Notes under the pieces: generated by a model
Database searches by the model: none
What the model was told of the DNA's origin: nothing
Seen by the model: only the letters and a program-made list of their open reading frames with translations
Assembly (NCBI RefSeq): GCF_001194135.2
Contig: NC_068993.1
Location: forward strand, 1,234,629 to 1,298,628
DNA length: 64,000 nucleotides
Direction: 5' to 3'
Origin: Octopus bimaculoides
Lineage: Eukaryota
Translations under genes and position numbers: made by a program
Shown here: positions 34,166 through 49,525 of the stretch, piece by piece
How the letters are laid out: the number at the start of each line of letters is the position of its first letter
Position numbering within the stretch: position 1 is the first letter of the stretch

Positions 34166-34304
34166 TGAGTCAAACAACTGTTTAGTGACGCGTATGCCGC
34201 TCCACGAGTGCAACTCAGCAACAGTTCTATACAACCACTCTCAGCGAAGATACTGAGTCAGTGACGCCGCACTTACACTGACGCGGACGCCACAGTGACG
34301 TCAC
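34166..34304. promoter_or_regulatory. Cluster of bZIP sites (2 AP-1, 1 full CRE, 3 CRE half-sites)
   Basis: TGAGTCA at 34166 and 34254; TGACG at 34186, 34262 and 34279; palindrome GTGACGTCAC at 34295-34304. Confidence 0.45.
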
Positions 34305-36290: not shown

Positions 36291-36459
36291 ATAAAAATGT
36301 TCGGTTAAATCGGGGTGTATCAGTGGGAAGAGGGTATTAGATGCCAATCTCTTCTGCTGTCACTGAGTTATATTACTTACATCAATGGCTGGTTTATGGT
36401 GTTGGTTGCTGTTGCTGTCACTGTTTATTGGTTGTGTGCTCAGTAACTGATTTATAATG

Positions 36460-36790
36460 TATAGCAGCAGCACCGGCAGCAGCACCGGCAGCAGCAGCAG
36501 TAACGCTAAGTAAAATAGGTTTCAATTACACAGCCATTTAGTTCACTAAAATAGCTTTAAATTACATTGTTGACTCTCCTTCTTCTTTGTCTTGCAATTG
36601 AACAACAACACCGACAACATCACCGACAACGACGGTAATAGAAGCACGATAATCAACAACAACAACAGCGATAGAAGTACTAACGATACCAGCAGCAGCA
36701 GCAGCAGCTGAGCAATAAGAACAGTCCACAGCGACAGTACTAACAGCAGCAGCAGCAACAGCAGAAGCACCAAAAAGACGACAGAACCAC
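36460..36790. repeat. Degenerate (CAG)/(CAA)/(CGA) triplet region
   Basis: Triplet-periodic low-complexity sequence, including a duplicated AGCAGCACCGGC. Confidence 0.75.
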
Positions 36791-36891: not shown

Positions 36892-37803
36892 CAGTAGTTT
36901 TATTTTTATAACGTGCTGTTTTCTACAAGTGCTCCACCCTTTTTGCAGCCCATATTTCTTCCATGTACTTCTCAAGATTGTTACTCACTGTTCCCAGGGC
37001 TCCAACAATTATTGGTACTACTACCACCTTTTTCAAAAATCAATGGATATGACCTGTCATATCTCTCAACTTTTCTTTCTTCCTTATCACATACCTTGTT
37101 GTCAGCGGTAGGGCATGCTATATCTATAACCCAGCATCGTTTGCTTTCTTTCTCAACACTATGTCTGGTTTCCTATTTTCCTTTTTGCATTATCATTTTC
37201 GAAGATGCCTTCGGGTTTGTGTTCGTACCACAGTTTGCTCTCTCAAGTCCATACTTGTTGCAAAGTGTCCAATGGACAAGCCTGGCTATATTGTCATGAC
37301 GGCACTTATATTCTTTCTGGGCTAGTAGTGCACATTGACTGGTAATATGCTATACGGTTTCATCATTTTGTCCACAGATTCTGCACTTATCACTTTCTGA
37401 TGTGTTGTCTATTCTGTATTTGATGTAATTGGTTCTTAATGCTTGCTCTTGGGCAGCACAGATTAGAGCCTCCGTTTCCGATTTTAAATCAGTTTTAGTC
37501 ATCCATATCCATCTTCTTTCTCCGTCTGTCTTATCTTCCCTATGAAATTGTCCAAGCATTCTTTTTTTTATCCACCTATTTTCAGTTTCATTCATTCTCA
37601 AGTGCCTGTACAGTACTTTATCTTTGCAATCTTCCATCCTACACAAGCATTTGTTTACATTTATATGGAGTATCCCATATCTAGTCAGCAACTCCCTTGT
37701 CTTTCTTAAAGACAGACCGGTTATTTGTTCCAGATCTGTGCCATTTGAGGAGTTCAATTCCCACCGAGGTAGCCTTTCTTCTTCATTCTTCTGGATTCTA
37801 GAT
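36892..37803 (-). mobile_element. Decayed R4/Dong-clade non-LTR retrotransposon, C-terminal part (end of RT region, CCHC finger, restriction-like endonuclease)
   Basis: Translation across stops and frameshifts gives KSETEALICAAQEQALRTNYIKYRID, CRICGQNDETV*HITSQC (CCHC), YKCRHDNIARLVHW, ENRKPDI, CWVIDIACP and KKVVVVPIIVGALGTVS. These are hallmark motifs of RLE-type LINEs. The 5' part is missing. Confidence 0.9.
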
Positions 37804-37833
37804 ATATAAAGTATCAATTAAATGCTGGGTATA

Positions 37834-41121: not shown

Positions 41122-41612
41122 ACACATTCACAAACATACACACATACTCATACATTCACACATGCATATACACACACACACTCATATACATTCGCACATG
41201 CACACACAAACACGCTCAGCTTAAGTAACAGGACAGCTGTAAAAAAAAAACAGCTAGCCACGTAAAAAATTACACAAAAAAGAACCAACAAAAAGAGATT
41301 AAACGAAAACCTGACTTAGTAGAAATAACAGCCAAATACCCCTGATAGTACACTCAAATTTTGTAACAGAATAGAATGCATTAGATAATGTAGACCAAGG
41401 TTGACCATGCCCCAGTGAAAATCTGGGGCGAAACAACACAAAGTACAGACCCAGAAACAAGGCCAAGAGTGACTTAGCCACCAATGGAATGTGTGCACTA
41501 TCGCTACCTCCGCCGCCGCCACTAGTACTACCACCACGCCACCACCACCACCACCATTAGTAGCACCACTAAAAATATTTCTAGTTAATAAAAATTTTGT
41601 AGCATAATTATT

Positions 41613-43902: not shown

Positions 43903-43957
<55 letters not shown>

Positions 43958-44483
43958 NNNNNNNNNNNNNNNNNNNNNNNNNNNNNNNNNNNNNNNNNNN
44001 NNNNNNNNNNNNNNNNNNNNNNNNNNNNNNNNNNNNNNNNNNNNNNNNNNNNNNNNNNNNNNNNNNNNNNNNNNNNNNNNNNNNNNNNNNNNNNNNNNNN
44101 NNNNNNNNNNNNNNNNNNNNNNNNNNNNNNNNNNNNNNNNNNNNNNNNNNNNNNNNNNNNNNNNNNNNNNNNNNNNNNNNNNNNNNNNNNNNNNNNNNNN
44201 NNNNNNNNNNNNNNNNNNNNNNNNNNNNNNNNNNNNNNNNNNNNNNNNNNNNNNNNNNNNNNNNNNNNNNNNNNNNNNNNNNNNNNNNNNNNNNNNNNNN
44301 NNNNNNNNNNNNNNNNNNNNNNNNNNNNNNNNNNNNNNNNNNNNNNNNNNNNNNNNNNNNNNNNNNNNNNNNNNNNNNNNNNNNNNNNNNNNNNNNNNNN
44401 NNNNNNNNNNNNNNNNNNNNNNNNNNNNNNNNNNNNNNNNNNNNNNNNNNNNNNNNNNNNNNNNNNNNNNNNNNNNNNNNNNN

Positions 44484-44515
<32 letters not shown>

Positions 44516-44521
<6 letters not shown>

Positions 44522-45431: not shown

Positions 45432-45468
<37 letters not shown>

Positions 45469-45541
45469 AACTCAGTCAGTTGCCCATAAGTCAGGAAAAA
45501 AACGGTCCCTCTAAAAGAAATTGTGACCAGTTATATTTTAT

Positions 45542-45620
45542 GTAGTATATCCTTGGTTGTGGCCGGTCAAAAAGTGACTATTGGTATCTTTCTGACTGGC
45601 CATAACCACGGATATACAAC
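45542..45620 (+). ncRNA. Candidate microRNA precursor hairpin (predicted pre-miRNA 45555-45609); family not recognised
   Basis: Arms 45542-45574 and 45588-45620 pair over 33 positions: 28 Watson-Crick, 2 G-U, 3 mismatches, with a 13-nt loop. With a 5p cut at 45555, UG falls at -14/-13 (45541-45542), the 3p end at 45609 has a 2-nt overhang, and CTAC (CNNC) starts at +16 (45625). Confidence 0.6.
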
Positions 45621-45629
45621 TCGACTACA

Positions 45630-45680
<51 letters not shown>

Positions 45681-46314
45681 ACACACACATATATATGTAG
45701 GTGTGTGTGTAGCTCTGTGCATATATCTGTGTATACATACTCATTCGTATACATATATGCCTGTATGTAAGTTTATATATATGTGTGTGTGTTTGTGTGT
45801 GTGTGTCTGTCTGTGTGTGTGTGTGTGTGTGTATGCACAATCTGAAGTGAAAACAACCAGACAAACACCAGATAGACAGAAAATGGTCTCCTATCTCGCA
45901 AAAATATATGTAATTTGTACCAGTGTACTTATACTTGTGTGTGCACGTATGCATGTTTGTCTATATATATATATGAATGCTATCTGTGTGCGTGAGTGTA
46001 TCTAACTATCTATCTCTCTCTCTCTATATATATATATGTATACATATATATGTGTGTGTGTGTGTGTGTATGTATGTATGCATGTGCACGTGGATATGTG
46101 TTCGTTTGTATTTATTCATGTCTGTCTTCCCCACCTCCACTTATTTTCCCAATTGTAGAAAGTACTCGTTTTCAACGGTCTTCTTCTGTCAAAGAGTATT
46201 AAACTCTGCAGCAAAAGATGGGTTGGTGGGGTTAGGGTGGAGGAATTATGTCTACATGCATCTTGGTCGCCCATCGCAATGTTCAACAGAAAAATAAATC
46301 ATTTGTGTGTATGC

Positions 46315-49330: not shown

Positions 49331-49332
<2 letters not shown>

Positions 49333-49525
49333 TAAGTACGAAATAGCCCGGCTTTGGAAAATGAAGAAAGTGAGAATAGTGCCAATTATTGTTGGGTCTT
49401 TGGGGACAATAGAACAGATAACATGGTACCGTAAGCCGCAGGCAGCAAGCCCGCTACGCATGCGAGACTCCAGGAGTTCCAACAAAACCTGAGATAAAAA
49501 GAAATTTCTGCAACAAGAGAATAAA
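49331..49525 (+). mobile_element. Short R4/Dong-type LINE 3' fragment
   Basis: 49331-49417 translates YKYEIARLWKMKKVRIVPIIVGSLGTIEQ, homologous to the KKVVVVPIIVGALGT segment of the 37-kb element. It starts directly after an (AAT)n array. The remainder is a presumed 3' UTR. Confidence 0.75.

What the first reader, a model, noticed from the sequence alone, without database searches (positions are those of the whole stretch)
45541..45628. Hairpin with canonical Microprocessor geometry: candidate unrecognised microRNA
Seen in sequence: GTAGTATATCCTTGGTTGTGGCCGGTCAAAAAG (45542-45574) pairs with CTTTCTGACTGGCCATAACCACGGATATACAAC (45588-45620), giving 28 WC pairs, 2 G-U pairs, 3 mismatches and a 13-nt loop. 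The G-U pairs become A-C mismatches on the minus strand, which favours a plus-strand RNA. A cut 13 nt into the stem places UG at -14/-13 and CNNC at +16, and gives a 55-nt precursor with a 2-nt 3' overhang. Established: a stem of about 35 bp, basal UG and CNNC are Drosha/DGCR8 determinants, and coleoid cephalopods carry many lineage-specific miRNA families. Inferred products: 5p about GGUUGUGGCCGGUCAAAAAGUG, 3p about CUUUCUGACUGGCCAUAACCAC. I do not recognise either. No apical UGU motif is present.
Basis: partly seen in the sequence, partly recalled or inferred. Interest (0 to 1): 0.8.

Follow-up and report, generated by a model that had tools for sequence, protein, structure and literature searches.

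The report
Lone miRNA-shaped hairpin, function unproven
A real and unusually stable 79-base hairpin with the right shape to be cut into a microRNA sits in repeat-rich non-coding DNA, but no expression or conservation evidence could be obtained, and most such hairpins are by-products of local DNA copying errors rather than genes.

Summary
Bases 45542-45574 pair with 45588-45620 (28 WC pairs, 2 G-U, 3 mismatches, 13-nt loop; -49.7 kcal/mol, z = -6.55). It is the only exceptional complex-sequence hairpin in the 58.5 kb of resolved sequence.

The stated geometry also holds. A cut at 45555 puts UG at -14/-13 and CNNC at +16, and gives a 55-nt precursor with 19 paired duplex positions. That cut was chosen to fit the motifs. 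It gives G and C as 5' nucleotides, and three other processing motifs are absent. The plus-strand call rests on a 2:1 count.

No Rfam family matches. There is no second copy in the window or in metagenome contigs, no target-site duplication, no exon within about 8 kb, and no neighbouring RNA gene. The organism could not be identified, so "cephalopod" is unverified. The defining miRNA tests (small-RNA reads, orthologue conservation, MirGeneDB look-up) could not be run.

The most likely reading is a locally generated inverted duplication at the edge of a microsatellite cluster, Microprocessor-competent only if transcribed. A published base rate is about 0.9% of such hairpins annotated as miRNAs. 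I estimate about 10% that it is a genuine miRNA. It is a legitimate but ordinary candidate.

The parts
45542..45574 (+). 5' arm of the inverted repeat (33 nt).
45575..45587 (+). 13-nt spacer or apical loop (UGACUAUUGGUAU). RNAfold adds a weak 3-bp helix inside it. GUG lies at the junction (45574-45576) and there is no UGU.
45588..45620 (+). 3' arm of the inverted repeat (33 nt).
45541..45542 (+). Basal UG, at -14/-13 only if the 5' cut is at 45555.
   Evidence: the only one of 11 cuts that registers it.
45625..45628 (+). CNNC (CUAC), starting at +16 from a 3p end at 45609.
45435..45463 (.). Upstream (TG)n microsatellite. In a long transcript it is predicted to pair with the downstream (CA)n.
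45627..45689 (.). Downstream (CA)n microsatellite, starting 7 nt after the stem. It is the edge of a microsatellite cluster of about 1 kb.
45465..45626 (.). The 162-bp unique segment between the two microsatellites that carries the hairpin. It has no paralogue elsewhere in the window.

Best explanation
This is a genuine, apparently single-copy imperfect palindrome of 79 nt: two 33-nt arms that are 85% complementary (91% if G-U counts), separated by 13 nt. It lies in non-coding, microsatellite- and retroelement-rich DNA. Its most likely origin (inferred) is a local inverted duplication, such as a template-switch or fold-back replication error at the edge of a microsatellite cluster. The arms would then have accumulated five substitutions and no indels. 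It is most likely not an established miRNA gene. Shown: the structure, its exceptional stability, the lack of copies in the window, and the lack of a TSD. Inferred: the origin, and that if the locus is transcribed on the + strand the stem has the length and some of the motifs to be a Drosha/DGCR8 and then Dicer substrate. In that case it would behave as a proto-miRNA, yielding low-level small RNAs of uncertain function.
For: Structure and significance. Not a repeat-family member as far as can be seen: it is single-copy at up to 3 mismatches, by blastn-short and by Smith-Waterman (score 28 against a shuffled-null mean of 27.5). Two metagenome scans found nothing, and no called ORF in 5.8 billion proteins shares the peptide read across it. 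No TSD of 3 bp or more exists at any boundary. The arms differ only by substitutions, with a perfectly symmetric stem, as expected of a diverging inverted copy. The hairpin abuts about 1 kb of TG/CA/TA microsatellites. No known RNA family matches. No tRNA and no protein-coding exon within about 8 kb were found, so there is no evident host transcript. Base rate: 0.9% of suitable template-switch hairpins in genic regions are annotated as miRNAs (PMC10710096). None of the candidate seeds is listed among O. vulgaris miRNA target 8-mers in the held, truncated supplements, and one is labelled a non-seed k-mer.
Against: No outgroup sequence was available, so the template-switch origin is untested. 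Genome-wide copy number is unknown, because only 64 kb of the source genome was visible. The co-registration of UG and CNNC at one cut has a chance probability of about 0.0065 per fixed cut, or roughly 2-3% allowing a few plausible cuts. With a mid-duplex G-U at 5p position 11 and 19 paired duplex positions, this is somewhat better than expected of a random inverted repeat and leaves room for a real miRNA.
Confidence: 0.55

Rival explanations
1. It is a bona fide, lineage-specific canonical miRNA gene, either unannotated or annotated in MirGeneDB but unrecognisable with the tools here. Drosha/DGCR8 would cut about 11-13 bp above the basal junction, Dicer would then cut, and one arm would be loaded into Argonaute.
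For: The stem is 33 bp. UG sits at -14/-13 and CNNC at +16 for a cut at 45555. The duplex has 19 paired positions, the inter-arm loop is 11-15 nt and the precursor is 55-59 nt, all inside MirGeneDB ranges. A G-U lies at 5p position 11, matching the mid-BMW motif. A cut at 45553 would give a mismatched U1, typical of 5p matures. If the organism is a coleoid, 90 novel families are known there and the authors state their count is an underestimate (PMC9699675).
Against: No single cut satisfies both the motifs and the U1 preference. The CmR, bulged-GWG and UGUG motifs are absent (sequence compared). The stem is fully symmetric. There is no Rfam hit and no seed match in the held octopus tables. No nearby exon or evidence of transcription was found. 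Flanking microsatellites may close the basal single-stranded region. The base rate is low. The organism is unverified.
Confidence: 0.1
2. It is a relic of a very short palindromic MITE, Made1-like, with two terminal inverted repeats around a few internal bases. It may be one of many genomic copies and might feed siRNA- or miRNA-like pathways.
For: [quoted passage not shown] The window is rich in other transposon remnants.
Against: There is no TSD. There is no second copy in 58.5 kb, even at low stringency, although other repeat families recur several times in the same window. The public collections searched gave no hit.
Confidence: 0.2
3. It is a long double-stranded RNA element rather than a miRNA: a hairpin-RNA or endo-siRNA source, or an ADAR editing substrate. 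The (UG)n and (CA)n flanks would extend it into a larger fold-back.
For: The 321-nt fold gives -145.5 kcal/mol, with an outer helix of about 31 bp of perfect WC pairs enclosing the hairpin.
Against: There is no evidence of transcription. The two helices are separated by an asymmetric 77/7-nt junction. A (TG)n/(CA)n pairing of this kind would arise anywhere such microsatellites lie in opposite orientation.
Confidence: 0.08
4. It is a chance pairing or an assembly artefact.
For: The scaffold is a draft with 14 gaps.
Against: z = -6.55, with 0 of 200 shuffles as stable. Artefactual palindromes are perfect, whereas these arms differ at 5 of 33 positions. The hairpin lies more than 1 kb from the nearest gap.
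Confidence: 0.02

Closest known systems
Canonical bilaterian miRNA precursors as curated in MirGeneDB
   Same: It has a stem of about 33-35 bp, and arms of 22 nt are possible. The duplex has 19 paired positions, the loop is 11-15 nt and the precursor is under 80 nt. Basal UG, CNNC and a mid-duplex wobble are present at one cut.
   Different: There is no expression or conservation evidence. The stem is perfectly symmetric, and the CmR, bulged-GWG and UGUG motifs are absent. At the motif-registered cut the 5' nucleotides are G and C. No Rfam family matches.
Template-switch-mutation (TSM) hairpins that occasionally become de novo miRNAs (Monttinen et al. 2023, PMC10710096)
   Same: It is a near-perfect inverted copy that forms a miRNA-sized hairpin in otherwise unstructured, unique sequence. 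It is single-copy with no TSD.
   Different: The ancestral, pre-event state cannot be reconstructed here. The locus shows no host gene or promoter, which that paper identifies as the limiting factor.
Made1 MITE / hsa-mir-548 family (PMC1784062)
   Same: It is a palindrome of about 80 nt made almost entirely of two long inverted arms with a very short spacer, and it forms a very stable hairpin.
   Different: There is no TA or other TSD, no further copies were detected and no related autonomous element was seen.

Membership tests
Canonical animal miRNA (MirGeneDB criteria) | A hairpin with extensive arm complementarity, about 19 +/- 1.6 paired positions in the 22-nt duplex | tested here: met
   19-20 paired positions for cuts 45552-45555; yardstick.
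Canonical animal miRNA (MirGeneDB criteria) | A loop of at least 8 nt and a precursor length within the clade range (molluscs under 80 nt) | tested here: met
   The unpaired spacer is 13 nt, the inter-arm loop is 11-15 nt and the precursor is 55-59 nt.
Canonical animal miRNA (MirGeneDB criteria) | Reads of 20-26 nt from both arms with 2-nt 3' offsets (the Drosha and Dicer signature) | not testable with these tools
   No small-RNA data are accessible.
Canonical animal miRNA (MirGeneDB criteria) | Homogeneous 5' ends of the mature product | not testable with these tools
   No small-RNA data are accessible.
Canonical animal miRNA (MirGeneDB criteria) | Presence in a second species, which is required for a family name | not testable with these tools
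   No related eukaryotic genomes are searchable by DNA. Indirect routes found nothing.
Canonical animal miRNA (MirGeneDB criteria) | Processing motifs (UG, CNNC, UGUG, CmR, bulged GWG, mid-BMW), which are supportive rather than defining | tested here: inconclusive
   Three of six are present at cut 45555: UG, CNNC, and a G-U at 5p position 11. CmR, bulged GWG and UGUG are absent.
Canonical animal miRNA (MirGeneDB criteria) | U at positions 1 and 9 of the mature arm, which is a propensity rather than a rule | tested here: inconclusive
   Cut 45555 gives G1/C9 and C1/C9. Cuts 45553 and 45554 give U1 but lose the UG and CNNC register.
Any Rfam RNA family | A covariance-model score at or above the gathering threshold | tested here: not met
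   The best hit is mir-582 at 24.9 bits against a gathering score of 84, and it hits both strands. There are no hits at gathering score anywhere in the window.
Annotated Octopus vulgaris miRNAs (Zolotarov 2022) | Seed identical to a listed miRNA | tested here: inconclusive
   Twelve candidate 8-mer sites are not listed as seeds, and CAGAAAGA is labelled 'Non-seed kmer'. The files are truncated and hold no mature sequences.
MITE (Made1-like palindromic element) | Terminal inverted repeats making up most of the element | tested here: met
   The arms are 33 nt and 85% complementary, with a 13-nt spacer.
MITE (Made1-like palindromic element) | A target-site duplication flanking the element | tested here: not met
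   There is no direct repeat of 3 bp or more at any boundary combination, and no TA/TA.
MITE (Made1-like palindromic element) | Multiple dispersed copies | tested here: inconclusive
   No copy was found in the 64-kb window or in metagenome contigs. The source genome itself could not be searched.
Template-switch-generated inverted repeat | An inverted copy adjacent to its template that is absent from the ancestral or outgroup sequence | not testable with these tools
   The structure is compatible, but no outgroup is available.

The most novel reading that the evidence does not exclude
The hairpin is a very young, lineage-specific miRNA caught near its birth. An inverted duplication at a microsatellite boundary would already carry a correctly spaced basal UG and CNNC, and would be processed into roughly 22-nt RNAs in the source animal. 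If the animal is a coleoid cephalopod, this would add to the exceptional miRNA expansion reported there.
Probability: 0.1. Interest if true: 0.45.

Novelty: new member of a known kind. Interest (0 to 1): 0.22.

Why it matters
If small-RNA data showed precise processing, this locus would be one more lineage-specific miRNA. It would also be a clean example of how a single inverted duplication next to a microsatellite can create a Microprocessor-ready hairpin, which bears on how miRNA repertoires expand. If not, it is one of the many inert genomic hairpins. It then shows why structure and motifs alone are insufficient for miRNA annotation.

Tried and rejected
(1) Rfam: the local permissive scan and the whole-window gathering scan gave only sub-threshold, strand-symmetric or microsatellite-driven miRNA hits, which I rejected.

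(2) Literature: the arm sequences appear in no paper full text and not in the Zolotarov 2022 supplements. A positive control showed that those files hold no mature sequences, so this null is uninformative. The MirGeneDB 3.0 supplements are not held.

(3) Seed test against the octopus target-site tables: no match, which is weak evidence because the files are truncated.

(4) Using the mechanical ORF that reads through the hairpin as a handle on orthologous or repeated DNA: the exact look-up found nothing and the homology search found no candidate.

(5) Looking for a protein-coding anchor near the hairpin to fetch orthologous loci: a 3,663-aa concatenate of non-repetitive ORF pieces from 38-53 kb gave no hit.

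(6) Identifying the organism through the LINE reverse-transcriptase tail at 37353-37817(-): the best relatives are 57-64% identical, on unnamed ENA contigs. I did not proceed with a Pfam scan of all ORF pieces, judging it a lottery for short exons.

(7) Two metagenome-contig DNA scans returned 0 hits.

(8) A tandem unit of about 1 kb, suggested by a 16-nt motif at a spacing of about 975 bp, was rejected, because the hairpin segment has no paralogue.

(9) The second strong hairpin at 36371-36510 is a CTG/CAG-like composition effect with z = -2.3.

(10) I considered a LINE/SINE 3'-tail stem-loop followed by a microsatellite tail, and rejected it. The stem is far longer than such signals, and no other copy exists in a window that carries several LINE and SINE fragments.

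Full report
OBSERVATION. An ungapped inverted-repeat scan of the whole window reproduced the counts exactly: arms 45542-45574 and 45588-45620, with 28 Watson-Crick pairs, 2 G-U pairs, 3 mismatches and a 13-nt spacer. RNAfold of 128 nt gives -49.7 kcal/mol on the + strand (z = -6.55, with 0 of 200 dinucleotide shuffles as stable) and -47.9 kcal/mol on the - strand (z = -5.30). In a 321-nt context the stem pairs keep probabilities near 1.0. Only the two outermost pairs (45542 and 45543) drop below 0.05, which puts the effective basal junction at about 45545.

IS IT MORE THAN CHANCE? Yes. Of eight loci in the window with at least 26/33 complementary stems, seven are AT or GT microsatellites folding on themselves, and this is the only complex sequence. 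In a gapped, energy-based scan of 100-nt windows on both strands it ranks first among 9,016 complex windows (-47.1 kcal/mol against a mean of -14.9, sd 5.8). The next-best single hairpins are composition effects. The one at 36371-36510 is a CTG/CAG-like tract with z = -2.3, and those at 34181-34300 and 41411-41530 have z = -0.6 and -1.4.

Among cuts at 45550-45560, only a 5' cut at 45555 puts UG at -14/-13 (45541-45542) and a CNNC start (45625) at +16. With local base composition the chance of both is about 0.07 x 0.09 = 0.0065 for a fixed cut, or roughly 2-3% if a few cuts are considered plausible.

I compared that cut with the MirGeneDB 3.0 yardsticks: arms 22 +/- 1 nt, loop minimum 5 and median 15-16, 19 +/- 1.6 paired positions, and mollusc precursors under 80 nt (PMC11701709). 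It gives 22-nt arms, 19 paired positions, an 11-nt inter-arm loop, a 55-nt precursor and a G-U at 5p position 11, which is the 'mid-BMW' position. The hairpin therefore passes every structural criterion.

Three points count against over-reading this.
- The cut was chosen to fit the motifs. It yields G1/C9 on the 5p arm and C1/C9 on the 3p arm, whereas mature arms are strongly enriched for U at positions 1 and 9. Cuts at 45553 (a mismatched U1, typical of 5p matures) or 45554 restore U1 but lose the UG and CNNC register. No single cut satisfies everything.
- The CmR (mGHG), bulged-GWG and apical UGUG motifs described are absent. There is no bulge at all. Positions -6 and +4 pair, and -5 is U. 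Only a GUG sits at the stem-loop junction (45574-45576).
- The stem is perfectly symmetric, while these motifs characteristically break the symmetry of real pri-miRNAs.

STRAND. The five arm differences are two transversions (A.A at 45544/45618 and U.C at 45553/45609) and three transitions. Two of the transitions are G.U on the + strand (45559/45603 and 45565/45597). The third is A.C on the + strand, which would be G.U on the - strand (45570/45592). A 2:1 split and a difference of 1.8 kcal/mol do not establish a strand.

IS IT A KNOWN RNA OR A REPEAT? No Rfam family matches. The best hit over the hairpin is mir-582 at 24.9 bits against a gathering score of 84, and the - strand scores almost the same. 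The whole window has no Rfam hit at gathering score and no tRNA, so there is no known miRNA neighbour.

Both arms are unique in the window at up to 3 mismatches. A degenerate arm consensus matches only the two arms. Blastn-short finds nothing longer than 12 nt. Smith-Waterman alignment of the 162-bp unique segment 45465-45626 against the rest of the window scores 28, against a shuffled-null mean of 27.5 and a maximum of 32. Other repeat families do recur several times in the same window.

No direct repeat of 3 bp or more flanks the palindrome at any boundary. Two scans of the metagenome-contig collection found nothing. The peptide that the one open frame reads across the hairpin has no relative among 5.8 billion predicted proteins. 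A MITE is therefore not supported, although genome-wide copy number remains untested.

CONTEXT. The window is a gap-rich draft scaffold (14 N runs, GC 35.7%) dominated by microsatellites. The hairpin lies 77 nt after a (TG)n tract (45435-45463) and 7 nt before a (CA)n tract (45627-45689) that opens about 1 kb of TG/CA/TA repeats. In a long transcript these two tracts are predicted to pair into an outer helix of about 31 bp that encloses the hairpin (-145.5 kcal/mol). That would remove the single-stranded basal flanks that Microprocessor prefers.

A concatenate of all non-repetitive ORF pieces from 38-53 kb has no protein relative, so no exon lies within about 8 kb and no host transcript is evident. 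The only recognisable coding remnants are LINE pieces. The ORF at 37353-37817(-) is a reverse-transcriptase zinc-binding tail (PF13966). Its best relatives are 57-64% identical on unnamed ENA contigs, and one lizard protein is 41% identical.

LITERATURE. The general statement that coleoids have many lineage-specific miRNA families is correct. Ninety novel families are reported, of which 12 are cephalopod-wide, 43 coleoid and 35 Octopus-lineage. The authors stress that this count is an underestimate, and also that many lowly expressed small RNAs are background products of the pathway (PMC9699675).

The arm sequences occur in no paper full text. They are absent from that paper's held supplements, but a let-7/miR-1/miR-124 control showed that those files hold no mature sequences. 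The same files list 8-mer target sites per miRNA. None of 12 candidate sites, for 5p starts at 45552-45557 and 3p starts at 45586-45591, is listed as a seed, and CAGAAAGA is explicitly labelled a 'Non-seed kmer'. The files are truncated, so this is only weak evidence against identity with an annotated O. vulgaris miRNA.

WHAT IT MOST LIKELY IS. It is a single-copy, indel-free inverted copy with 15% arm divergence and no TSD, at the edge of a slippage-prone microsatellite cluster. That is what a template-switch or fold-back replication error leaves behind. Such events are frequent and only rarely become genes. In primates, only 0.9% (57 of 6,054) of suitable template-switch hairpins in genic regions are annotated as miRNAs, and a pre-existing promoter is the limiting factor (PMC10710096).

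Starting from that prior, I raised it for the UG/CNNC/mid-wobble registration. I lowered it for the lack of any evident transcript, the unfavourable 5' nucleotides, the missing motifs and the possible closure of the basal flanks. The result is about 10% for a bona fide miRNA, about 20% for a MITE relic, about 8% for another dsRNA role, about 2% for an artefact, and about 55% for a locally generated inverted repeat with no established small-RNA function. The origin step is inferred. The structural facts are shown.

COMPARISON AND NOVELTY. The closest known kinds are canonical MirGeneDB-type miRNA precursors, which have the same shape but whose defining evidence is missing here, and template-switch de novo hairpins, which show the same pattern but whose ancestral state cannot be tested here. 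[quoted passage not shown] It has almost the same architecture, but this locus lacks a TSD and further copies. Whichever reading is right, this is a new instance of a known kind, not a new kind.

VERDICT. Interest is low to moderate (0.22). The decisive tests are cheap and lie outside this toolset: small-RNA read mapping, a genome-wide copy count, alignment to sister species, and a MirGeneDB look-up.

Noticed in passing
window 45435-45463 and 45627-45689: The (TG)n tract upstream and the (CA)n tract downstream of the hairpin are reverse complements. In a 321-nt fold they pair into an outer helix of about 31 bp of perfect pairs (-145.5 kcal/mol), which makes the whole of 45435-45689 an interrupted fold-back.
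   Followed up: partly
window 36984-37817 (- strand): This is the 3' end of a LINE. The ORF at 37353-37817 is a reverse-transcriptase zinc-binding tail (PF13966). Frame-shifted continuation pieces lie at 37176-37349 and 36984-37172. The best relatives are 57-64% identical on unnamed ENA contigs, so it is an old or lineage-restricted copy.
   Followed up: partly
window 49331-49489 (+ strand): This looks like a second LINE C-terminal fragment (pseudo-translation ...IVPIIVGSLGTI...). It was judged by eye and not tested.
   Followed up: no
window 3791-4069, 4381-4614, 6801-7169, 19659-19942, 20441-20878: A dispersed short repeat family recurs at least five times on both strands. It is recognisable by the shared pseudo-translation '...STGTYFIDPERMKGKVNLSGI...' and is probably a SINE. 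The hairpin is not part of it.
   Followed up: no
window 36371-36510 (+ strand): This is the second most stable complex hairpin in the window (-51.4 kcal/mol over 140 nt). Its z-score is only -2.3, because it is GCU/GUU-rich sequence pairing with (CAG)n-like sequence. It is a composition effect and not a candidate RNA gene.
   Followed up: yes
window 43925-44516: The 'inverted repeats' I1-I7 reported by the repeat finder (about 296-nt arms, 98% complementary) are an artefact of the 526-N assembly gap at 43958-44483, which is flanked by (AT)n on both sides.
   Followed up: yes
window 45521-45535: Just upstream of the hairpin, UUGUGACCAGUUAUA resembles the first 14 nt of miR-2001 as I recall it (UUGUGACC-GUUAUA...), apart from one inserted A. 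This rests on memory. No separate hairpin forms there and no Rfam hit appeared in the permissive scan, so it is probably chance.
   Followed up: partly
window 44521, 45488, 46474: A 16-nt A-rich motif (AAKTYASGAAAAAAAC-like) recurs at spacings of 967 and 986 bp, which hints at a period of about 1 kb. The hairpin-bearing segment shows no such periodic paralogue.
   Followed up: yes
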